NCBI GenBank assembly: GCA_037379345.1
Contig: CM074521.1
Span: forward strand, 6,138,001-6,202,000
Length of the DNA: 64,000 bases
From: Perna viridis
Taxonomy: Eukaryota
Direction of reading: 5' to 3'
Positions 1,372-12,100 of the stretch are shown piece after piece. Below the pieces are notes generated by a model that worked only from the letters and a program-made list of their open reading frames with translations, was not told the DNA's origin and did no database searches. The stretch's first letter is position 1. The number at the start of each line of letters is the position of its first letter. Both the position numbers and the translations under genes were made by a program.

Positions 1372-1482
1372 TACAATTCTTCATTATTCATGACAATAGA
1401 AAAGAAAGTTTTAACATTTAATCACTTTTTCATTATTTTGGTGTTATATGAATTTTCAATCAAATTTATGTAGCTCTATAAC

Positions 1483-4400
1483 CTTATCCTGTATTGATGT
1501 CAGTTGACCTAGCTGTGCACCCTTTCCTCCAACCAGGCTACCATGACAACAAGCCTCATCTCGAAATGACAAGGTCAGAGCATCTTTTTTTATCTCTTCA
1601 ACCTCTGATTCCTCTCCTAACATGGGTACAGATTCTGGAGGAATATATGAAACTCCATCTGGATTTCTGAAAATGTTCATCAAAGATGAAAATAACTTAT
1701 GCTATATTTCTATGCACATAAACATGCATCACCTACATATACATGTAGTTTTCATATGAACACAATAATTATTGCCTATAACAAGCAGCTTTTAAAATTA
1801 TCAGACAGGTAGAAATATGTGCATGCAAAAATCTACAAATTCACAATTTCACAGTTTCATACCTCATAACCAGTCTTTTAGTTGTTGCACTTTTGAAATA
1901 GCTTATCTTAGATGATAAATATATAGTTTCTCTAAAATGCAGACCTGTATAAAACAGAAAAAACTTTAAAACATAAAACTATGGCATATGTAGATAAAAA
2001 AAAATAATCATGTTAATGGAACACTCAATGATAGCCTGCCATGTAATGATGGTGAAAAAAGGGGGATGGTAAAATTTTCAAAATGGCTTAACTCAAAAAC
2101 TGCATTTAGGAATTTCCTTAAAATTGTACTTACCCTTGACTTTAATAGTACTAAATAACTGTGCAAAGTTTAAAAAAATTCAATGATCTGCTCTCAGATC
2201 ATGCTAGAACACCAAATGGTATGGCAACCTTCTACAGTATAACTACCTATAATGGAACTCAACCAGACCAAATCCACTGACACCATTAACTTTGTAGTTA
2301 CAGAATTTTTCATAAACTATACTTCCTCGGTCGTCATGGTGATACCAAGTTGGTGTCCAGCTTCCTTCAACAACTGTATCATACCTTTTACCATCTACAA
2401 AATTTAAAACAGGAAAAATATCAGGCAAGGGAGACAAGACTGTTTAGGTCTATCATATACCTCTAACCCTTCAAAACAAACAGGCAATATACTAAATGTT
2501 GTTCTGGTAAAACACTGCTCTACACCAAGAAGGCAACCATAGGCAATCATGGCAAAAGACTAAGTGCTGTTTGGGTAGAACAGCTCTAACCTTAACTGGC
2601 ATCTAGGCAAGTGACTATTTAGGTCAAACATAACTCAATTCTAGACCAAATGTACATGTACACTGATATAGTTCTGGCAAAACATTGCTCTACACTTAAA
2701 AGGCAACTATAGGCAATAGATTAAGTGCTTCAATGTAAAATAGCTCTACCCTTGCCAGGCAACTAGGCAAGTGACTAATGACTCTTTAGATCAAACAAAT
2801 CCCTATTCCTAGAAGTTAACTAGGTAAATAAATTAGAGCTCTTTGTGTAAAACATAGATCCATCCCAAAAAAACAATTTTACATACACTTATAGATTTAG
2901 CTTTAACAGTTCTCATCTGCAAGTTGATACCATAAGAATATTGCACATATAATGGCATAAGCTACATATACCTGTTATTTTGACAAGTTTAAACTGGCTG
3001 TTTGGAGGTAAATGTATACAAACAATTTTTCTAATTTATCCAATTTTGGTGAATGCTCATTGGTGCACTGAGAAATGAAACCCTGGCCAAAGTGCCACAA
3101 AACTTGAGAAAATACTTAAGTCTGAGAAAGATTAAATGTTTGAGATGTCATTGATTTCTTAGATATTGATTGGAGTTACCATGGAAGTTAAGAATATTCT
3201 CAGAATTAAGTATTTTTTTTACTTTTGTTGTGCTGGGGCCAGAGTAAATATTTTGAAGAATTTATTTTAGTGGTTTTTAGAAAGACAACTAAACTATGCC
3301 AAAATTAGCACTCCAGAAAAATTAATAGCTATACCGTACATATTTTGTGATTTTTCTGCAAAAGTACTAACTCATCTTTACTCACTCTTTTTCATGACAT
3401 ACCCCAATAATCAAAATGTATTTGGAATGCTGTCATACTATTTCCAGAGTAATGATGGAGCATAAAGAAATGATATGCATGATTAATTCTAGATAAAGAT
3501 TTCCCCAATAAAGGTTAATATATAGAACATCATACATTAGTCTATTTTTTTTTTGGTTAAAATTTTATTTAACTCATGTACTTACTTGCATAAAATGTGA
3601 AACTGTAATTGTTCTTTGGACCGTCTGCTGGAGCAACATCCCAGAGTCTGATGTCTATATCGGATACAGAATGCTTGGCTCCATTTGCATGCATCAAGTA
3701 CCCTATTTTTATACTGCAACAGACAAATATCAACAACTTCTCCTTAGCATCATCCTCCAGATTAGCTCATACAAATGTATGTTCATGTATTTTGTTTTTT
3801 CAGTATAAGTATATTATATATAAACTTGAAAAAGAATTAAATGCCAAGTGGAGCAAGGCAATTCCCAATTTAAGAGAGGGTTTACGCCCAGCATGTCTGT
3901 CTTTGGACTTTGGATTCACGCCTGATAGCAAGGTGTTTGATGGTTTTTCCAATGAATCCCTACTACCACTGATTAAGGGCTGGCACTTATATTCATGAAT
4001 TACACCAAAATGGAAGTTATGGGTAAACTAAAAAATTTAAACTGAATTCAATGTTACAATATGTTGAGTGATGCATGTGTGAAGAAGTTAAAGTCATAAA
4101 CACTTCATTCCAGCATAGTTATCTGAAAAACTCTTACTGTGACATTGTGGATGGAGAACTCACAACACCAGTTTGGATCATATTACCATTCTGTAAAAAG
4201 TAAACATAGAAATGATACTTTTCTTTTACTTCTTTTTCAGGCTTACACAATTACACAAACTTTAACACAGAAACATCAAATCATGCCCTGGATTGAAACT
4301 TGCAAGGACAGAAGAAAATTAGTGAAGTAAAAAAAACACCCAAGCAGTTTGTACAACCTGGAAAGAAGCAAATAAAATGCTAAAATAAGAAAATTGAAAG

Positions 4401-7400
4401 CAAATGTAAATGCCCCTAGTGTACATGTACCGGTATCTGCAGGGGTCAATATCTAACAGCACAAAATGTTTTTTAATTCTATTCTTGCTTGTGACAATAG
4501 TGAAAATAAATTGATCATAAAAATAATTCAGTTTATTTATAAATGTGTATCATACATATGTTTGATCTGTTAAAATGATGTTAAGAATATATACATCTAT
4601 GACACATATATTTTATACATACATTTTATATTCATATTAAATAAGTCTATTACCTCCAAATAAATAAAATGTATGGCATATCTGTAAAATGACCTCCAGT
4701 CCCTTACACCTACAAAACATTTTTAAACTTTAAAATGCAATTCACACTAAAAATAAAAAAAATAAGCTCATTATGAAAATACCCCTGCATAAAATGGGGT
4801 TCAATGTTAAACGTTAATCTATTACAAATGTGTATGAAGGCAGTGTACATGTGTAAACAATCTGCCCTTTGTTTATCAGCATCAACACAGATGATTCAAT
4901 ATAGCTTGGTGATTGAAGATTGTCAATTTAGTATCACAACAGAAGCCGGAAATATGAGGCAGTAAGAACAATGGAAAAACTACAAAATTCAGGGAAGTTA
5001 TAACATACCAAACGAATGATCCCTGATTGCTTTTAAGATCACTGGTTTCTCATGGTATCCTTCAATGTATATCTTCCCTCGGAATTCTCCCCACTGTTCA
5101 TAATGGGTCTGATGTGTACTGAAACAAAATCAAAGTGGTGAGAACTTCAATAAAAACTGCTGTTAACTTTTATAACAGTTCATGTGGGAGATTCTCCCTG
5201 CCCCCTGACACTGTCTCCTGTTGGGGATTTTTACATAAAAGCAAATTTTATACGTACCGGTAAAAATTAAGTTATTTCGTATTCTTCACAGAAAATATAT
5301 TAATTTTTACCAAAATCCTACCACAAATCTTAACTTAATGTGGGAGATTTTTAATTTTTCATTAATTTTGTGGGAGTCTCCCCACTAATGTTGGGGGGGG
5401 GGGTAGATAACAGGGATAACAGGTATGCATTTATATGGACAAAATTACCATAATACATGTAAATGCATGTAATAATTTTTTACAGTTATTTAGCATAGAC
5501 TAATCCATTTTTGCTTGATGCATATGTATTGTTACTTTGAACATAAAATACAGTACAGTCCCTTAAACGATCGATTAATCTATTTGATGACCAATGAAAG
5601 ATTATTTACCAATCACTGAGGACTTGATAACCAATGACCAGTGAGCATTCTGATTTGTAATATTTTTAAATTTTGTCATATAACAGATGATAAATTTACA
5701 TGTATGTGAATTTCTAAATTTTTATTGGAATGAATCTAATGCTATGCTACTGTAAATTTACTTTGAATTCAATATATTGAATTATGTATTTTATCAAAAA
5801 AAAAAAAATGTGACAGGAAAGTTACTAAATTTTTAATTAGTATATTTGTGTAAAATTCAAAAAGTAAACTATACATGTCGTAAATATATGTAGCAATCAA
5901 TTGTCAGGTTGCGTAAAACAGACACAATCACCAATATGACAGATCAATGACCGATCTATAATGATTAATGACATACTGCAATTATAAAGGACCGCTTTGA
6001 ATTGCTGGTCAGATTATGGGATATCAATGACTTTGGGTTGGTTTACGCTGAATAAATAGCAAAGTGCTTCATGTTGCAGCATAAACTGACCTAAAGTCGT
6101 TTATGTTCCATAATCTAACCAACAATTGAAAACCATTCTTATATTTTAATTAAGAAATACCAGAAAACAAAAAAATTAGATCCCAATATATTGTTTTTAT
6201 AATCTGAAATCCACATTTATTTAACACAGATCAATACTGTCAGCTGTCAACTGATCACGCCATTTGTAATTTACGTGCATACTTTTGGTATATTGTGATA
6301 CCCCAATTGAGTTAGGAGGCGTGGCTTAAATACCAAATTAGGTTACACAAAATGGACAATGTTGCTCAATAACACTGAACTATTCAGAATTTCACAAAAA
6401 TTAAAAACATAGTTGTATGGATGGGTTTATGTACTATACAAGGCATTTTTCTAAGCTTTTAAATTTTGTTCCTTTTAGGGATTTTTTTCTTACCTTCGAA
6501 GTGCAGACCAGAATTGTTTGGTCCATGGTTCCCTAGCAACAGCATCAGCTAAAGCTGACTGGTTCATATCTGTGTCAAAACTAAATGGATCAGTAACTGC
6601 CTGCCACCTGCAAAAATGACAAGATAACGACTTTTTTTTCAAATGGACATATTTTTATGTAATAATAAAAACTTGTTTGCCAACATCACTAACCTATCAA
6701 CATTCTTAGTTTCAGGATCTTTATATTGCCTAACTTCATGTCACTCTCTTCATTTTGCTCAAGTCCATGATCTTCATTTTGCCCATTTTTATGATTATAT
6801 CTTTACCTATTTCACAATCTTTATTTTTACTAATTTCATGATTTGTTTTGCCCAAATTTATTTTGACTGATTCCATGGTCTTTGATTTATTATGGAATAA
6901 AATATAGGGAGTTTAAATTCTTGTCTTTTCTTCCAGTAAATCATAACACCAAATTAAAAATTGAAACCTCTTTATAATTTTTTAGATCTTGTTAAAATTT
7001 TGAAGACATTAATAAATATGAATCAAACTAGCAGACTTTTTTAAATTCAAGCTACATGTATGTCTTTCATTAATTTATACTTATCAAAACATGTACGTAA
7101 TAAATCTGTTTTATCACAATAATACATTAACATGAAATGTAAATGAATTATCTCCCTTTAGACACATGAGTGATGTCCCTTTATAAGCTTGCATGTATTA
7201 TATATTGTTTCACTCATATATTTGATCAAACACAGCAGCATACAATTTTAATATAAATACACCCTAGTGGGATTTGCAGAGGGAGGTGGATTCCTAAGAG
7301 TCCCCACTACCCTTGGCTGCAAAAAAACTTTTGAGACTGTTGAAAGGAGCTTAAAATGTGTTAAGCACTAATATGATTTTATGCTTTGCCTATGAGGACC

Positions 7401-10400
7401 AAAGCTCATTCAGACATTTTATTGATAATACTTCACCATGTTGTTATCACAATGATGTCAGGAATATGCAAGACTTCATATAACATTCACTTTGCAGTTG
7501 CATTAAAAAATCTAATAATTACTTCTGAATTTAACATATGTCATTTCTGACTGAAGAACTTTGAGCTTTTGACATTTAAGACCCCCCTAAATGTAGGACA
7601 TTGCTGATGCTTTGTCCCCTTTTACATCAAAGAAGATGTACATTATAACCTCCTCTAACCCCTCTAAAATATTAACTAGCATGACCAAGGGCCAGATGCA
7701 CTTACACCAAGGAGAACTGTACAGGTACTAAATTGTCAGTTTCGAAGAATCTGAAATGAAAAGGAAATTATATAATTGTATTTCAGTAACTATTCATTTC
7801 AATTTACTACAAAAATCTGTGTTGCTATAAACTACATGTACTTAGAGGATTATGGGTAATAAATGTTAACAAGCGTAAAACATCAGTACTGAACATAATA
7901 ACAAAATTTAACACTATTCTTACAAGTCAAAATCAGTTTTTATGACGGAATTGGACATACAGCCCAAACCAAATGATGCCTGCTTTATCAGGCATATATG
8001 CATGTTTTTTTATTATTTGTTTCACAATTTCACCGATTCTGATTCTGTCCATTTTTGAAAAAAATAAACTAATGCACAAGTACTATTTTTTGCAGTTACA
8101 TAACTTGTACCGGTATCATATGAATGGTGTTACCTACATGTATGAATGTTCTTTTGTTATATTTTTGCATAAATGAAATAATTATATCTATGTTAAAAAA
8201 GTCTTATTCACAGATACAGCTAGCTCTAAGAAGTTTTCCAACAAAAAAATGACAGAACTTACTTCATCTGGCCATTATAAGACACTTTCCATTTTTTCAT
8301 CGGCTCAATCATCTCTATTTTTAGTCCTCCTGCCTCATACTTATTTACTGCAGTATTACAGACCAATGTGTCAGGATGTAGAGGGTGCTGTAGTTTCATT
8401 CCCCCAGGCATCTCCAGTAGAAGCCATACTTCAGCCGTACGATTGTGACGCCTGGCTACACGTGTTACCAGCCTAACACCATCCTCATTGTATGACCCAA
8501 AATATACAGTGTCAATACCCTAAAAATAGGATAGTTTCTACTACTGTGCAACCAATTTATTAGGAAAATGAACCCCTTTGGACATCACTTTTCTTCCAAA
8601 TAAATCAGATGTTCAGATTAACAAGGTTCAAAATACATCTAAGGTCCTGTGGCCTGCCCTGTGGTGTGAGGTTTCCCTTGTCATTCATTGAAGACCCATG
8701 GGTGGCCTTAGGCTGACATTTTTAGTGGAATTGTTGTTTCTTTGACATATTCACCATATTCATCCTAGTTGTATATTTAAGTTAGCATGACATGAATTTA
8801 AAAGGGTTTGCTTTCGACCCATTTTATTGCATCATATTTACCTGGCATATTTTTTTCATGAAACTTGCTGAAAGCTGTTAAAGCAATTTTAAAATGATTG
8901 TTTGATTGAGTGTTGTTCAACCTCCAAAGACAGATATCTCATTCATTTCAATAATACAGAACTTGTGTCACAACTTGAGATGGATTTCAAAGAGGTAGAT
9001 CTAGGATAAGGGACACAACTCTTACAAATCAAAGGAACATTTGTATTTGCCATTTTCCATCAATCTCATGTAAGCATTGAAGTAACGCGGACTGATTTTA
9101 TTCTGTTTCAAATGTAAGCTTGAAAAGCTTTGGTGAAATTGATTATGATACAAGCCTATCACTGATTTCAAGAGTTATGTCCTTTACCCTAGGTTTACCT
9201 CTTTAAATGTGCAAGCCCACAGAAGCAACACTTGTTGGTAAGTGTTTCATCCACCTGAACAGAATCTATCGATCCAGATATGCCTAGTGCTTTGTACAGA
9301 AACATTGACTAACAATTATAAAGCCTCTGTATAATTTGGTTGGAGATATAATCCACAACCTTCTCCACTTGTGTTGAACACAGTTCCACAATACCAACCA
9401 GGCATTTTTTTTTTAAAATTAGTTGATAAAATCTTATTTGTAGGTGATGATTAAAATGTGGTTTTTTTTTTACACTTAACGGTCACCTGGTTGAAATTTG
9501 TCTTTCAAGGGCAATAAATTAAACAAGAAGTTATCCAACAATTTTGACTCAAGAAAACTTTGATAGGACTTATCAAAAGGATCATTTCAGTAAATGAAAG
9601 TCTAAATCCATCATAGTTTTCAAGACATTGGCTGAAAACTGTAAGAAAAATAAACCTGTCATTTTCCCCTGTCAAGGGCAATAACTCTTATAAGAAAGCG
9701 TCTGACAAATTTTATGCCTGAAGACTTTTGTAGTCCTAAAAATAAGGATCATTTCAAATATTGAAAGAATTTGGCTAAACCTAACGGTTCTGGAGATATA
9801 TTCGAAAAACTATTATCTGACCCCTATGTTCTACTTTTAGTAACAGCGGCCATGTTTTTTGACGTATCAAAATATCCCCACATCAATTCTATACAGGATA
9901 CCCCAAGGAACATTCATACCAAGTTTGATTCTAATTGGTCAAGTAGTGTCAGAGGAGAAGATTTTTGAAAGAAATAGCATTAAAAATAGCAAAAAGATGT
10001 CGAAAAAGGGAAATAACTCCAACATGGCTTCATAGATTAAAATGAAAATTTGACCACAGATAGATCTCATCATGCTTAACACTTTTACCCAGTCAGGATT
10101 GGGCTTCAGCTAACCATTTTGGAAGATATATGCGAAAAAATCAAAAATACCCATAGCCGTTCTATGCAGGATACCCCAAGGAGCATTCATACCAAGGTTG
10201 GTTCCAATTGGTCAAGTAGTTTCAGAGGAGAAGAATTTCGAAAAATTGTTAATGACAACGGACGCCAAGTGATGGCAATAGCTCACCTGGCCTTTGGCCG
10301 AGTGAGCTAACAAGAGTCTCCCAGGAGCCTGAATTGCTCACTAGGCTTAATTTTGTCCTTCAAGGGCAGTAAATTTAAGAATTTCTATCATAATTTTCAA

Positions 10401-12100
10401 GACCTTAGCTGAAAACTGTAAAAAAAAACTGTCATTTTTCCCTTTTCAAGGTCAATAACTCTTACAAGGAATCATCTAACAACTTTATCTCTAAAGACTT
10501 TTGTAGTCCTACTAATAATATGGATCATTTCAGCTATTGAAAGAATTTGGCTAAACCTAACAGTTTTGGAGATATATATGAAAAACTACTGTCTGACCCC
10601 TATGTTCTATTTTTGGTAACGGCAGTCATGTTTTTCAACAGATCACAAATCCACATTAGTTCTATGCAGGATACCCTAAGGAGCATTCATACCAAGTTTG
10701 ATTCCAATTGGTCAAGTAGTGTCAGAGAAGAAGAGTTTTGAAAAATTGTTAATGACAATGACGGCAGACGCCAAGTGATGGCAATAGCTCACCTGGCCTT
10801 CATCCGGGTGAGCTAAAAAGTCAATTTTGTGATCAGGAGCTTGATATTCATGCTGTGACGAGAAAATCTAAAAGTGAAAATAAATTATTTCACATGTGAA
10901 TTATGGATTTTACTATACAGGGAATATTAAATAAATCACTGCTATCTACATGTATGTGTGTATAATAATTATAAAACATAAATGAAGCTATGGTTATGAT
11001 TACTACACTATAGCTTACAAAGGGATCTTTATCTAACTCCTGACATTTTTCTAGTAGATGAATATCTCCTATTCCTAATCCATAACCTCTCTTATCATAT
11101 TGCTCTTTCTCAGAGGTCTTTGTTGTTTTGTTTTTCCTCTTGTTCAGTTTTAGTAGAAGTCGGAAGATAACTTTCTTTAATGTATACCATCTCCCTGTCA
11201 ATAAAAATGTGTATTAAGAGCATGAAATAATGAAAAATATTTCTCATCCAACATTTTCCAAAGTTACAGGCAGGTGGACAGGCTTTTTCTTTTTAAATTT
11301 TAATCAATTTAAATAAAAATTGACCAAATTTGGGGAAAAAATCCAAATATTTCTCATGGAGGGTGATAAAATTGGGTCAGGAGAAGATGAGAATCTAGGA
11401 TATTTTTTTATTTTGGCCTCAGGTGTTCAAATGAATGCAAGTTTGAGGTCTAGGACCCTCCATCTCTGACACAAGAACTTTCAAATATAATTAACATAGG
11501 CTCTGCATGGATCTTCAATACATTACACTGAATTTTTTCTGAGGACCTTCTGTTTATAAATGTACATCAAGTGACCTCTGACTTGACATCTACAGAAGTA
11601 TTGGACCTTTAATACTCCTCATTGAATCCCTACTGAGGACCTTCTGTTTACATCGAGTTTTGATTTGACATCTTCGAAGGACCTCCCATCTTCAAAAACA
11701 AAATTGAACCCTTGAGTATTGTACATTAGTGTTCTCCACTGGTCCTTTTATGGTAGTATGTGATCCTATTTTGATTTGATGTGATGCTATCTGAACTGAT
11801 TTTCCTGTAGATAATGTTACAAATGTGATGCTATAATTTCAAAGGAAAAGATGCTATCCAAATTATCTAGTTTACATTTGTACCAGGATGCCTTTTTTAA
11901 TTTTCTCTTCAATGTACATGTATAGTCAGGATTTGAAGCATGAATGGCCAACTCACTTAGCAGGCAGCAGAAAATAAAGGACCAAAAATTAAGTTCATAC
12001 CTGGTAACCTGTAAACACCATCTATAGGCTTGGGTTGTGGTTTCAGAAACTGCCACAGAAATACAAGGGCACATCCACCAATGGCTATGGACCACAACAT
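1483..12100 (-). CDS. Putative PEP-synthase/PPDK-family phosphotransferase (PigC/rifampicin-phosphotransferase/YvkC-like) with N-terminal membrane anchor and HYEQ/RDHS domain; 3'-partial, continues left of the window
   Basis: 11 GT-AG exons join in frame (457 codons): 12100-12001, 11194-11019, 8519-8263, 7750-7706, 6607-6494, 5118-5009, 4709-4654, 4190-4138, 3713-3586, 2394-2247, 1666-1483. Translation: MLWSIAIGGCALVFLWQFLKPQPKPIDGVYRLPGRWY...GIDTVYFGSYNEDGVRLVTRVARR...IEPMKKWKVSYNG...HQTHYEQWGEFRG...IRDHSFGVRDW...GFGLVEFHYR...SLVGGKGAQLGQL. GGKGxxL is the start motif of the PPDK/PEP-synthase nucleotide-binding domain. Confidence 0.85.
2440..2870. repeat. Degenerate ~170-bp tandem repeat (about 2.5 units)
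   Basis: GTTCTGG.AAAACA.TGCTCTACAC...AAGGCAAC.ATAGGCAAT...CTAGGCAAGTGACT repeated at ~2501 and ~2671. Confidence 0.7.
8987..9206. mobile_element. TTAA-flanked MITE, same family
   Basis: AAAGAGGTAGATCTAGGATAAGGGACACAACTC ... GAGTTATGTCCTTTACCCTAGGTTTACCTCTTTAA. Confidence 0.78.
9478..10819 (+). mobile_element. Two head-to-tail copies of a non-autonomous Helentron/HINE-like element (~9478-10310 and ~10309-10819)
   Basis: Duplicated body, which gives the near-identical pseudo-ORFs at 9771 and 10547. Each copy ends in the palindrome TAGCTCACCTGGCC...GTGAGCTAA, and copy 2 starts AACAAGAG. Confidence 0.7.

What the first reader, a model, noticed from the sequence alone, without database searches (positions are those of the whole stretch)
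1483..12100. Intron-rich animal gene for a membrane-anchored, bacterial-style PEP-synthase-family enzyme fused to an HYEQ/RDHS domain
Seen: an in-frame 11-exon CDS with a hydrophobic N-terminus (LWSIAIGGCALVFLWQFL), a ~350-aa domain carrying D-x-x-YF, EPMKKW, HYEQ-x-G, RDHSFGVRDW and GxGxxE motifs, then GGKGAQL. Established: GGKG starts the ATP-grasp domain shared by PPDK, PEP synthase, prodigiosin condensing enzyme PigC/RedH, rifampicin phosphotransferase and Bacillus YvkC; vertebrates lack classical PPDK/PEPS. Inference: the HYEQ/RDHSxG domain resembles bacterial tocopherol-cyclase/AttH/CrtC-like beta-barrel proteins. The fusion could therefore bind or cyclise a lipophilic small molecule and phosphorylate it at a membrane, as an uncharacterised invertebrate secondary-metabolite or xenobiotic pathway, possibly of old horizontal origin. 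I recall similar invertebrate proteins annotated only as 'putative PEP synthase', with no known substrate.
Basis: partly seen in the sequence, partly recalled or inferred. Interest (0 to 1): 0.75.

Follow-up and report, generated by a model that had tools for sequence, protein, structure and literature searches.

The report
Animal kinase fused to phosphate-removing enzyme
This is a real, expressed mollusc gene for a membrane-anchored enzyme that joins an ATP-using kinase to a relative of a bacterial enzyme that cuts phosphate off steroids, which suggests it removes water from a fatty alcohol in two steps.

Summary
On the minus strand, 11 in-frame exons (window 12100-1480, 1374 nt) carry all the motifs reported. 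Spliced RNA contigs from 4 runs support 6 of the junctions. The gene runs about 57 kb beyond the window and does reach the ATP-grasp core and the catalytic-His swivel domain.

It is the orthologue of ~1330-aa proteins that RefSeq calls 'rifampicin phosphotransferase-like', 'putative PEP synthase' or 'YvkC-like', found in molluscs, echinoderms, arthropods, flatworms and sharks. It falls far below the curated cut-offs for all of those families.

The N-domain has the AttH-type double barrel (Z 25). Its only solved sequence relative is 25-phosphosteroid lyase (profile E 2e-20).

In bacteria the two halves are adjacent genes in 40 of 80 loci. In Actinobacteria the same domain is fused or adjacent to kinases of two unrelated folds in 9 of 12 loci.

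Best reading (inferred, not assayed): an RPH-type dikinase phosphorylates a hydroxyl on a lipophilic substrate, and the N-domain then eliminates the phosphate. This amounts to an ATP-driven dehydration at a membrane. The substrate is unknown.

The gene family is already annotated. I did not find this mechanistic reading in print.

The parts
12001..12100 (-). Exon 1, coding part. It holds the ATG at 12100-12098 and a 19-residue uncharged hydrophobic segment followed by a K/P-rich stretch. This is the predicted N-terminal membrane anchor. An acceptor-like 'ag' at about 12111 suggests a further 5'UTR exon upstream.
   Evidence: matches oyster residues 1-34, 50% identity; donor GT at 12000-11999; Kyte-Doolittle mean 1.73. 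No RNA was laid here.
11019..11194 (-). Exon 2. It encodes a basic amphipathic helix (RWYxLKK...LLKLNKRK) and a linker. The helix aligns with the N-terminus of the bacterial stand-alone proteins.
   Evidence: oyster residues 34-94; acceptor and donor read directly; alignment A5. No RNA was laid here.
8263..8519 (-). Exon 3. It is the start of the first beta-barrel (DUF7065 part) and carries the DxxYF and EPMKKW motifs.
   Evidence: 158 database hits; 59% identity to oyster residues 91-175; 95 bits to profile A2.
7706..7750 (-). Exon 4, a 45-nt micro-exon.
   Evidence: tblastn with the mussel orthologue, E 0.003; acceptor cag, donor gtaagt, phase fits E3 and E5. This is the least certain exon.
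6494..6607 (-). Exon 5, the helical insert of the N-domain.
   Evidence: contigs in 4 of 4 runs; joint 5118|6494.
5007..5118 (-). Exon 6. It carries HYEQxG and RDHSFG, the signature block shared with 25-phosphosteroid lyase. The Asp aligns with the residue that reads Asn in the chain of PDB entry 9g4c.
4654..4707 (-). Exon 7. It carries VRDW, the invariant Arg and conserved Trp that complete the RDHSxGxRxW block.
4138..4190 (-). Exon 8, the start of the second barrel (DUF7064 part).
3586..3713 (-). Exon 9, second barrel.
2247..2394 (-). Exon 10, the end of the second barrel, with the GxGxxE motif.
   Evidence: (DUF7064, 16.6 bits, below the cut-off for this single exon).
1480..1666 (-). Exon 11. 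It holds the inter-domain linker and the first strand of the ATP-grasp domain with GGKGAQL. N-domain and kinase are joined inside the mRNA here. The gene continues below window position 1 for about 45 kb.
   Evidence: (joint 1666|2247 in 4 of 4 runs; the contigs continue about 2.8 kb further).

Best explanation
The window holds the 5' third of a roughly 57-kb gene of about 38 or more exons, in a mytilid-like bivalve. The gene encodes a ~1330-aa, N-terminally membrane-anchored, two-enzyme protein.

The C-terminal ~880 residues form a rifampin-phosphotransferase-type dikinase. It has an ATP-grasp domain, a large substrate-binding domain and a swivelling phospho-His domain. By analogy with RPH, ATP is split to AMP and Pi, the beta-phosphate is carried on the His, and it is delivered to a hydroxyl of a small molecule.

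The N-terminal ~330-residue double beta-barrel belongs to the DUF7065/DUF7064 family. The only characterised member of that family is 25-phosphosteroid lyase, which eliminates phosphate from a tertiary steroid phosphoester to leave an alkene.

Proposed mechanism (inferred): the kinase phosphorylates a hydroxyl on a lipophilic, membrane-associated substrate, and the N-domain then expels the phosphate as a leaving group. The net reaction is an ATP-driven dehydration, or other carbocation chemistry, at the cytosolic face of a membrane.

Shown here: the architecture, the expression on one transcript, the conservation of catalytic residues, the homologies, and the recurrent kinase partnership. Inferred: both activities, their order, the topology and the substrate class. 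The substrate is unknown.
For: Architecture:
- The oyster orthologue P0001 aligns exon by exon over residues 1-1310.
- Pfam places PPDK_N at 443-761 and PEP-utilizers at 1246-1316 in P0001, and DUF7064 in P0005.

Kinase:
- The best solved relatives are the Listeria RPH entries 5hv2, 5hv1 and 5fbs (E 2e-93). The codes 5FBS, 5FBT and 5FBU are confirmed as RPH-Lm in PMC4844700.
- RPH-Lm Arg666, Glu667 and Lys670, and the carrier His825, align with P0001 R1118, E1119, K1122 and H1280. These four are invariant in 14 of 14 diverse animal proteins, as are GGKG, RSS and other ATP-grasp residues. The window's exons carry them.

N-domain:
- The AlphaFold2 model of a stand-alone family member has pLDDT 90.7.
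- By Foldseek the top hits are 25-PSL entries 9g4c, 9fzn and 9g2i (E 5e-13). By VIA the values are AttH Z 25.3, kievitone hydratase 23.1 and 25-PSL 22.0. 25-PSL has the highest identity, 18%.
- 25-PSL was the top hit of all four family profiles searched against PDB sequences. E was 0.0064 (A1), 0.021 (A2), 7.7e-5 (A4) and 2.1e-20 over the full length (A5). The next hit in the A5 search had E 0.15.
- The signature RD[HR]SxGxR is shared. Its Asp reads Asn in the chain of entry 9g4c.

Coupling to kinases:
- In 40 of 80 bacterial loci, a ~336-aa homologue (E 1e-29 to 1e-59) lies directly upstream of the ~800-aa kinase on the same strand. The gap ranges from -68 to +162 nt, with a median of +3.
- In 12 actinobacterial DUF7064 loci, 4 are fused to APH/EcKL kinases, 2 are adjacent to APH kinases and 3 are adjacent to PPDK_N/PEP-utilizers kinases.

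Expression: spliced contigs join the N-domain to the ATP-grasp exon in 4 of 4 runs.

Precedents for 'kinase then phosphate elimination':
- 25-HSK with 25-PSL (PMC8449060 and PMC11061730, passages read).
- ACAD10 and ACAD11 (PMC11342911, abstract read).
Against: - No activity was measured, and no substrate is known.
- The 25-PSL link is distant: 15-18% identity, and animal-only profiles give only E 0.006-0.02.
- Single bacterial sequences find nothing in PDB.
- By Z-score, AttH, the fungal Diels-Alderases and kievitone hydratase match the fold as well as or slightly better than 25-PSL. The fold alone therefore does not say 'lyase'.
- The partner kinase of 25-PSL is an ADP-forming APH-type enzyme, not a dikinase (PMC8449060).
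- A stand-alone N-domain paralogue without a kinase is widespread in animals (78 of 78 hits) and is also present in this genome. The domain can therefore work without a fused kinase.
- 3 of the 12 actinobacterial loci showed no kinase.
- About 10 of 78 fused animal proteins have lost the motif Asp.
- The structural model is of a hemichordate paralogue, not of the window's own protein.
- The paper describing 25-PSL was not available, so I infer its catalytic residues only from the depositors' variant.
Confidence: 0.5

Rival explanations
1. The N-domain uses a different chemistry typical of its fold. It could be a hydratase, cyclase, isomerase or pericyclase, as in CrtC, kievitone hydratase, tocopherol cyclase or the fungal Diels-Alderases. 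It could act before the kinase, which would then trap the product by phosphorylation. Or it could use the phosphate as a leaving group for ring closure or substitution rather than simple elimination. This is.
For: - VIA Z-scores are 23-25 for AttH, kievitone hydratase and the Diels-Alderases, against 22 for 25-PSL.
- The nearest Atlas clusters overlap PF14249 Tocopherol_cycl.
- The stand-alone paralogue lacks a kinase.
Against: - None of those families is found by sequence with any of the four profiles, while 25-PSL reaches E 2e-20.
- The conserved R-D-[HR]-S..G.R block is shared with 25-PSL.
- A partnership with kinases of two unrelated folds is easiest to explain if the domain acts on the phosphorylated product.
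Confidence: 0.22
2. The protein is a kinase only. The N-domain is a non-catalytic lipocalin-like barrel that extracts or presents a lipophilic substrate from the membrane, or regulates the kinase. The end product is a stable phosphoester, for example an inactivated xenobiotic, as with rifampin phosphate.
For: - RPH and its relatives make stable phospho-products (PMC4844700).
- The bacterial gene pair sits in variable neighbourhoods. No other neighbour recurs in more than 5 of 40 loci. This is as expected for a self-contained detoxification module.
- About 10 of 78 fused proteins lack the motif Asp.
Against: - Polar residues inside the barrel (H, E, Q, R, D, H, S, R, E) are invariant or nearly so from bacteria to animals. 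That is unusual for a mere binding barrel.
- There is homology to a lyase.
- The stand-alone form is even more conserved than the fused form.
Confidence: 0.18
3. It is what its database names say: a rifampicin phosphotransferase, a PEP synthase or a PigC-like ligase.
For: RefSeq gives these names to orthologues. The best PDB relative is RPH.
Against: - NCBIfam scores are far below the curated cut-offs: RIF_Ptrans_rph 394 bits against 999, PEP_synth 310 against 740, PigC 324 against 1300.
- Residues 757-1030, which correspond to the drug-binding part, do not align with RPH.
- No PEP/pyruvate-binding domain was found by Pfam.
- RPH itself does not use pyruvate (PMC4844700).
Confidence: 0.03
4. 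It is an artefact, such as bacterial contamination, a pseudogene, or two neighbouring genes mis-joined.
For: None beyond the bacterial look of the domains.
Against: - GT-AG introns lie on a 39.6-Mb contig.
- Spliced contigs of 4.3-4.5 kb were found in runs from 4 studies.
- Orthologues are collinear over the full length.
- The gene tree follows animal relationships.
Confidence: 0.01

Closest known systems
Rifampin phosphotransferase RPH-Lm (PDB 5FBS/5FBT/5FBU, 5HV1-3; Stogios et al. 2016, PMC4844700)
   Same: - The three-domain order is the same: ATP-grasp, large substrate-binding domain, C-terminal swivel His.
- E is 2e-93.
- The carrier His and the Arg-Glu-Lys phosphotransfer triad are conserved.
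- It is presumably the same ATP to AMP + Pi dikinase cycle.
   Different: - The animal protein has about 430 extra N-terminal residues (anchor plus double barrel).
- Residues 757-1030 do not align with the rifampin-binding part.
- It scores 394 bits against the 999-bit equivalog cut-off.
- It is an animal gene with introns.
25-phosphosteroid lyase, 25-PSL (PDB 9FZN, 9G2I, 9G4C; Sterolibacterium denitrificans anaerobic cholesterol side-chain pathway)
   Same: - It has the same double-barrel fold (Foldseek E 5e-13; VIA Z 22, rmsd about 4 A over about 275 residues).
- The family profile matches it over the full length at E 2e-20.
- It shares the DxxYF-like, Q.G, RD[HR]SxGxR and GxGxxE blocks.
- It works downstream of a kinase.
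   Different: - Identity is only 15-18%.
- 25-PSL is a soluble stand-alone bacterial protein. According to PMC8449060, the gene for its APH-type, ADP-forming kinase partner 25-HSK has no lyase candidate beside it.
- 25-PSL has a long insert after the signature block.
- The animal substrate is unknown.
- I could not read the primary 25-PSL paper.
ACAD10 / ACAD11 (Paquay et al. 2024, PMC11342911, abstract read)
   Same: It is an animal bifunctional enzyme that first phosphorylates a lipid hydroxyl and then eliminates the phosphate to make a double bond. This is the same logic as proposed here.
   Different: The folds are unrelated: an APH kinase plus an acyl-CoA-dehydrogenase domain. The substrates are 4-hydroxyacyl-CoAs, and the enzymes are mitochondrial or peroxisomal.
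AttH (PDB 2ICH), kievitone hydratase (7A0Q/7A0T), fungal decalin-forming Diels-Alderases (Fsa2, Phm7, CghA) and Pfam Tocopherol_cycl
   Same: They share the two-barrel fold at Z 22-25 and act on lipophilic substrates. Atlas neighbours overlap Tocopherol_cycl.
   Different: There was no detectable sequence match with any of four profiles. I know of no kinase partnership for them, and this was not tested.
Bacterial two-gene module: a DUF7064 protein followed by a PPDK_N/PEP-utilizers kinase (e.g. Bacteroidales, Christensenellaceae, Chlorobiota, Myxococcota MAGs, L007-L084)
   Same: Both halves are present at 27-34% identity over animal residues ~76-1322. The HYEQxG, RDHSxGxRxW and GxGxxE residues are the same. 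It is the unfused form of the same system.
   Different: It is two genes rather than one. It has no hydrophobic anchor (0 of 38). The first ATP-grasp subdomain is shorter, with GGKA in place of GGKG in the three looked at. It is uncharacterised.

Membership tests
Rifamycin-inactivating phosphotransferase (RPH; NCBIfam NF041857 / NF000283) | ATP-grasp, then substrate-binding domain, then C-terminal swivel His domain, with the carrier His and the Arg-Glu-Lys triad | tested here: met
   on orthologues. The window and its downstream exons carry GGKG, VRSSA..GEDG, the REWGK-type triad and the SHG His.
Rifamycin-inactivating phosphotransferase (RPH; NCBIfam NF041857 / NF000283) | Score above the curated equivalog cut-off | tested here: not met
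   For P0001 and P0181 the scores are 394 and 402 bits against a cut-off of 999, and 284 and 299 bits against 1700.
Rifamycin-inactivating phosphotransferase (RPH; NCBIfam NF041857 / NF000283) | Rifampin-binding domain conserved, and rifampin phosphorylated | tested here: inconclusive
   Residues 757-1030 of P0001 do not align with RPH-Lm in phmmer. Activity is not testable with these tools.
PEP synthase / pyruvate, water dikinase (TIGR01418) | Equivalog score, central His domain and C-terminal PEP/pyruvate-binding domain | tested here: not met
   The score is 310-342 bits against a cut-off of 739.75. The His domain is C-terminal, and Pfam finds no PEP-utilizers_C domain.
Prodigiosin ligase PigC / RedH | Equivalog score | tested here: not met
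   The scores are 324 bits against 1300, and 297-302 bits against 1350.
DUF7065 + DUF7064 (Pfam PF23213, PF23212) | Pfam matches above the gathering score | tested here: inconclusive
   Single window exons score below the cut-off: 12.3 and 16.6 bits. No joined model was allowed. DUF7064 matched at E<=0.01 in 57 of 62 stand-alone relatives. It scored above its cut-off in orthologue P0005 (29 against 24.7) and in the bacterial partners.
25-phosphosteroid-lyase family (phosphoester C-O lyase) | Sequence homology to 25-PSL over the whole domain | tested here: met
   Family profile A5 gives E 2.1e-20 over profile positions 27-336 and chain residues 15-353. The window's protein enters through its family: exon 3 scores 95 bits to A2.
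25-phosphosteroid-lyase family (phosphoester C-O lyase) | Same fold | tested here: met
   Foldseek E 5e-13 and VIA Z 22 for the model of paralogue P0014. This is not the window's own protein.
25-phosphosteroid-lyase family (phosphoester C-O lyase) | Signature residues (RD[HR]SxGxR, Q.G, GxGxxE) present | tested here: met
   Window exons E6, E7 and E10. The residues are invariant or nearly so in A4 and A5. The Asp reads Asn in the chain of entry 9g4c.
25-phosphosteroid-lyase family (phosphoester C-O lyase) | Eliminates phosphate from a phosphoester | not testable with these tools
   Needs an enzyme assay.
Kinase-plus-phospholyase two-step dehydratases (functional class: 25-HSK/25-PSL, ACAD10/11) | A kinase and a phosphate-eliminating module are physically or genetically coupled | tested here: met
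   They are fused in animals. They form an operon in 40 of 80 bacterial loci. 9 of 12 actinobacterial loci are kinase-linked.

The most novel reading that the evidence does not exclude
DUF7065/DUF7064 proteins are, as a family, phosphoester lyases that always work behind a kinase. An early animal inherited or acquired the bacterial 'lyase gene + dikinase gene' pair, fused it once and added a membrane anchor. The result is a previously unrecognised, ATP-driven dehydratase of hydroxylated sterols or isoprenoids. It persists from molluscs and insects to sharks. Its N-domain later duplicated into a stand-alone enzyme that serves other kinases, for instance the EcKL family. If so, a whole branch of animal lipid or xenobiotic metabolism is hidden behind the labels 'rifampicin phosphotransferase-like' and 'DUF7064 domain-containing protein'.
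Probability: 0.3. Interest if true: 0.8.

Novelty: new variant of a known kind. Interest (0 to 1): 0.6.

Why it matters
**Annotation.** A ~1330-aa enzyme conserved across much of the animal kingdom carries misleading automatic names: antibiotic resistance kinase, PEP synthase, prodigiosin ligase. My searches of the held library found no functional study of it.

**A testable mechanism.** Three links give it a concrete mechanism, phosphorylate and then eliminate:
- the N-domain's homology to 25-phosphosteroid lyase;
- the C-terminal part's match to RPH-type dikinases;
- the recurrent fusion or adjacency of the N-domain family to kinases of two unrelated folds.

This mechanism comes with clear mutants and read-outs.

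**Wider reach.** It also suggests a general functional rule for two Pfam domains of unknown function. It adds a second animal example, after ACAD10/11, of ATP-driven dehydration of lipids.

**Possible relevance.** It may bear on sterol or terpenoid handling, or on toxin and xenobiotic metabolism, in farmed bivalves. This last point is speculation.

Tried and rejected
Steps that led nowhere or were inconclusive:
- Pfam on single exon peptides gave only sub-threshold hints.
- A whole-genome search for PF00391 found nothing. This was a false negative, because the 72-position domain is split over three exons.
- PF23212 also found nothing exon by exon in this genome.
- The search for related loci with A1 failed for lack of a conserved stretch. 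With P0001 alone it found no relatives. Only alignment A3 worked.
- Animal-only profiles gave merely marginal PDB hits to 25-PSL: E 0.0064 and 0.021.
- Single bacterial N-domain sequences gave none.
- I looked for a third conserved gene beside the bacterial pair and found none. The best was Y_phosphatase3 in 5 of 40 loci.
- Neither tree can give the direction of transfer. The kinase tree is unrooted, and the N-domain tree is rooted only on distant actinobacterial sequences. Both are 'quick' IQ-TREE runs under LG+G4, and many rows have deviant composition.
- The 80 loci are the best of 589 by tblastn score, so '40 of 80' is not a frequency in nature.
- L060 (Mycoplasmataceae) matched residues 161-1324 but gave no intact kinase ORF under table 11, so it was not counted.
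- L043 (partial, at a contig edge) and L051 (E 9e-4, out of frame) were left out of the 40.
- In the phylum-wide actinobacterial sample only 3 of 61 genomes had DUF7064. In the family sample 8 of 41 did.

Literature:
- Searches for 'rifampicin phosphotransferase-like', 'DUF7064' and 'putative phosphoenolpyruvate synthase' + oyster each returned 0 papers.
- 'putative phosphoenolpyruvate synthase' alone returned 9 papers, all bacterial.
- YvkC / rifampicin phosphotransferase returned 13 papers. The only animal one is a shrimp expression table.
- Searches for a 25-PSL structure paper found only PMC8449060 and PMC11061730, which predate it. That paper and its supplements may already discuss kinase fusions or animal homologues. 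I could not see it.
- Supplementary files were not consulted.

Recalled and not tested here:
- M. tuberculosis Rv3168 (an APH-type kinase) lies next to Rv3169. The N-domain weakly matches the NCBIfam Rv3169 family.
- B. subtilis YvkC relatives phosphorylate flavonoids.

The structural model is of P0014, not of the window's protein. Searches went exon by exon or used database orthologues.

Full report
**1. What is in the window**

The window is G000:C11:6138001-6202000, on a 39.6-Mb contig of a 723-Mb genome with about 32% G+C. The feature lies on the minus strand.

I found the exons from three sources: stop-to-stop translation, tblastn of a database orthologue against the DNA, and direct reading of splice sites. 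There are eleven exons:
- E1 12100-12001
- E2 11194-11019
- E3 8519-8263
- E4 7750-7706
- E5 6607-6494
- E6 5118-5007
- E7 4707-4654
- E8 4190-4138
- E9 3713-3586
- E10 2394-2247
- E11 1666-1480

Their lengths sum to 1374 nt, which is 458 codons, with matching phases.

Searches went exon by exon or used orthologues returned by the tools.

**2. Expression and the 'one transcript' test**

I laid contigs of four runs from four studies on window 1401-7400. The tool only guesses that these runs are RNA. The pattern nevertheless looks like RNA, because the contigs cover exons and skip introns.
- All four runs show the same six joints with CT..AC ends (GT..AG on the minus strand): 1666|2247, 2394|3586, 3713|4138, 4190|4654, 4707|5007 and 5118|6494.
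- In run X1 one 4262-nt contig, and in X10 one 4501-nt contig, carries E5 to E11 and continues about 2.8 kb further. That is the length needed for the rest of a ~1330-codon reading frame.
- The end of the N-domain (E10) is spliced to the exon that holds both the linker and GGKG (E11).

The two domains are therefore on one mRNA.

**3. The rest of the gene**

PF01326 (PPDK_N) matches 6.8 kb below the window. I fetched 50 kb downstream.

The oyster protein P0001 has 1327 aa. Its cluster includes RefSeq records named 'rifampicin phosphotransferase [Magallana gigas]' and 'putative phosphoenolpyruvate synthase'. It aligns collinearly on the minus strand over residues 1-1310. A last exon lies at L006 ~5288-5341.

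The swivel domain is split over three exons (L005 ~6325-6402, L005 ~2814-2912, L006 ~6444-6533). This explains why the six-frame search for PF00391 found nothing.

The closest orthologue tested is the Mytilus edulis protein, at 69% identity over 1179 residues in 31 segments. Oyster gives 57% and abalone 52%. The genome is therefore probably that of a mussel relative.

**4. The family**

Exon 3 alone finds 158 proteins at E<=1e-3.

The full-length fused architecture occurs in the following groups:
- bivalves, gastropods and many sharks and rays (38 of 38 hits);
- sea urchins, a sea star, a katydid, a locust, sawflies, a scorpion, a millipede and a flatworm.

The names given by the sources are 'rifampicin phosphotransferase(-like)', 'putative phosphoenolpyruvate synthase', 'uncharacterized phosphotransferase YvkC-like' and 'prodigiosin synthesizing transferase PigC-like'.

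A ~410-aa stand-alone form of the N-domain is also widespread in animals (78 of 78 hits). It occurs in hemichordates, nemerteans, annelids, a brachiopod, crustaceans, insects and a lamprey.
- This genome has one at C6:37522182-37536850, with exon breaks at similar profile positions.
- In the N-domain tree the animals form one clade (99*). The stand-alone proteins form a clade (97*) nested among the fused ones. This suggests that the stand-alone gene arose by duplication of the N-terminal part.

**5. The kinase part**
- Pfam finds PPDK_N (443-761) and PEP-utilizers (1246-1316) in P0001.
- The best solved relatives are 5hv2, 5hv1 and 5fbs (E about 2e-93). PMC4844700 identifies 5FBS, 5FBT and 5FBU as Listeria rifampin phosphotransferase. 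It describes the ATP-grasp domain (1-314), the rifampin-binding domain, the swivel His825 and the Arg666/Glu667/Lys670 network (passages read).
- In the phmmer alignment, those residues fall on P0001 R1118, E1119, K1122 and H1280.
- All four are invariant in 14 of 14 diverse animal proteins, as are GGKG, RSS, ED and other ATP-grasp residues.
- Residues 757-1030 do not align with RPH.
- NCBIfam scores are far below every curated cut-off: RPH 394 against 999, PEP synthase 310 against 740, PigC 324 against 1300.

It is therefore an RPH-type small-molecule dikinase, but not a member of any named equivalog.

**6. The N-domain**
- *Pfam.* DUF7064 matches 57 of 62 stand-alone proteins and DUF7065 matches 35 of 62.
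- *Model.* An AlphaFold2 model of P0014, built with 16 sequences, has pLDDT 90.7. It shows an N-terminal helix, a second long helix and two beta-barrels.
- *Foldseek.* 25-phosphosteroid lyase ranks first (9g4c, 9fzn, 9g2i; E 5e-13 to 3e-12). AttH, the fungal Diels-Alderases and kievitone hydratase follow.
- *VIA-align.* All of these fall at Z 22-25: AttH 25.3, 25-PSL 22.0. 25-PSL has the highest identity, 18%. Unrelated barrels score below 9.
- *Sequence.* 25-PSL was the top hit of all four family profiles searched against PDB sequences. With the animal profiles, E was 0.0064 and 0.021. With 37 bacterial partners, E was 7.7e-5. With a mixed profile of 28 animal, paired-bacterial and actinobacterial sequences, E was 2.1e-20 over the whole domain. 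The next hit in that last search had E 0.15.
D, S, G and R of RD[HR]SxGxR are invariant across the mixed alignment. The Asp reads Asn in the chain of entry 9g4c, which is the complex with phosphate and product.
- *Atlas.* The ESM Atlas places the domain next to bacterial DUF7064/DUF7065 clusters, some of which overlap Tocopherol_cycl.

The nearest characterised enzyme, however, is a phosphate-eliminating lyase (PMC8449060 and PMC11061730, passages read).

**7. Partnership with kinases**

A scan of bacterial genomes with an alignment of animal proteins returned 80 loci.
- In 40 of them, a ~336-aa homologue of the N-domain (E 1e-29 to 1e-59 against an animal-only HMM) lies directly upstream of the ~800-aa kinase on the same strand. 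The gaps run from -68 to +162 nt with a median of +3, and nine loci have a 4-nt overlap.
- These loci come from Bacteroidota, Bacillota, Chlorobiota, Myxococcota and Spirochaetota.
- No third gene is conserved beside the pair.

I then searched actinobacterial genomes for DUF7064/DUF7065 independently of the dikinase. Of the 12 loci found in 10 genomes:
- 4 are single ORFs that fuse an APH/EcKL kinase to DUF7065-DUF7064;
- 2 have an APH kinase next door, one of them together with an FAD monooxygenase;
- 3 have a PPDK_N/PEP-utilizers kinase next door;
- 3 showed no kinase.

The domain thus pairs with kinases of two unrelated folds. This is what one expects if it acts on the phosphorylated product, as 25-PSL does behind 25-HSK.

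**8. Animal-specific features**

A hydrophobic N-terminal segment (17-aa Kyte-Doolittle mean >= 1.6) is present in 63 of 77 fused animal proteins, 63 of 66 stand-alone animal proteins and 0 of 38 bacterial proteins. The window's value is 1.73.

The basic amphipathic helix that follows aligns with the N-terminus of the bacterial proteins. Positive charges after the hydrophobic segment suggest that the catalytic bulk faces the cytosol, where ATP is available. This topology is inferred and was not tested.

**9. Origin**

In the kinase tree, the 14 animal proteins form one clade (100*) apart from 77 bacterial ones. Within that clade, molluscs, arthropods and sharks group as expected. Paired bacterial N-domains are sister to the animal ones.

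This fits a single fusion early in animal evolution. Whether the genes came by transfer of a bacterial operon cannot be decided from these trees.

**10. Reading and limits**

The most economical mechanism is a two-step, ATP-driven dehydration of a lipophilic alcohol. The known analogies are 25-HSK/25-PSL and ACAD10/11 (PMC11342911, abstract read).

It remains an inference for these reasons:
- the fold is shared with hydratases, cyclases and pericyclases;
- the stand-alone paralogue lacks a kinase;
- about 10 of 78 fused proteins have lost the motif Asp;
- no substrate is known;
- the paper on 25-PSL was not in the library.

My searches found no paper on the animal family.

Noticed in passing
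G000:C6:37522182-37536850 (+), loci L088-L095: A second locus in the same genome encodes the stand-alone ~410-aa N-domain paralogue. Nine exon matches cover profile positions 2-402, and the exon breaks lie at positions similar to those in the fused gene.
   Followed up: partly
L101 7516-9507 (-), L104 5985-7970 (+), L105 756-2795 (-), L106 7635-9698 (-): Mycobacteriaceae genomes encode 661-687-aa single proteins that fuse an APH/EcKL (ecdysteroid-kinase-like) kinase to DUF7064 (four of four) and DUF7065 (three of four at E<=0.001). This is an independent kinase fusion of the same barrel domain.
   Followed up: partly
L032 512-2767 (+) and 10 further 'solo' kinase loci among L016-L086: RPH-like kinases that lack the DUF7064 partner often have another partner instead. 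In 11 of 40 loci there is an upstream ~750-aa fusion of an FMO-like flavin monooxygenase with an acetoacetate-decarboxylase-like (ADC) domain. This may be a hydroxylase-kinase-barrel cassette of another kind.
   Followed up: no
L108 5975-9582 and L110 6743-11086: In two actinobacterial genomes the DUF7064/7065 gene is followed by a HAD hydrolase and lies beside an aldehyde dehydrogenase. In L108 it also lies beside bacterial-microcompartment shell (BMC) genes. L110 also has a PPDK_N/PEP-utilizers kinase about 1.3 kb away.
   Followed up: no
L103 4492-11060: A Mycolicibacterium cluster holds an FAD monooxygenase, a DUF7065/7064 protein and a divergent EcKL/APH kinase. It sits next to HMGL-like aldolase, acetaldehyde dehydrogenase and IclR-regulator genes, a neighbourhood reminiscent of steroid or aromatic ring-cleavage pathways.
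   Followed up: no
window 9646-10820 (intron 2): Intron 2 holds two to three copies of a repeat, with pieces of 64-137 nt at 76-93% identity and spacings of 273-776 nt. The repeat also gives repeated open frames on the plus strand. A similar run of repeated frames lies in the intron at L002 1080-1944.
   Followed up: partly
window 3167-3218, 5198-5383, 6369-6406 (introns): Short intronic stretches are covered at high depth by unrelated contigs with loose ends on both sides. These are most likely fragments of expressed repeats or transposons, not part of this gene.
   Followed up: no
alignment of 78 fused animal N-domains: A subgroup of about 10 fused proteins replaces the signature Asp (mostly by Gln), and also replaces neighbouring Ser, Trp and Glu motif residues. 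These may be catalytically altered or inactive N-domains.
   Followed up: no
P0014, P0181, L012 2902-3915: The N-domain weakly matches the NCBIfam 'Rv3169 family protein' model (25-40 bits against a cut-off of 150). By recall only, Rv3168 next to it in M. tuberculosis is an APH-type kinase.
   Followed up: no
L060 (Mycoplasmataceae MAG): The locus matches animal residues 161-1324, but the reading frame is broken under genetic code 11. This is probably because TGA codes for Trp there, so it would be a further paired locus that was not counted.
   Followed up: no
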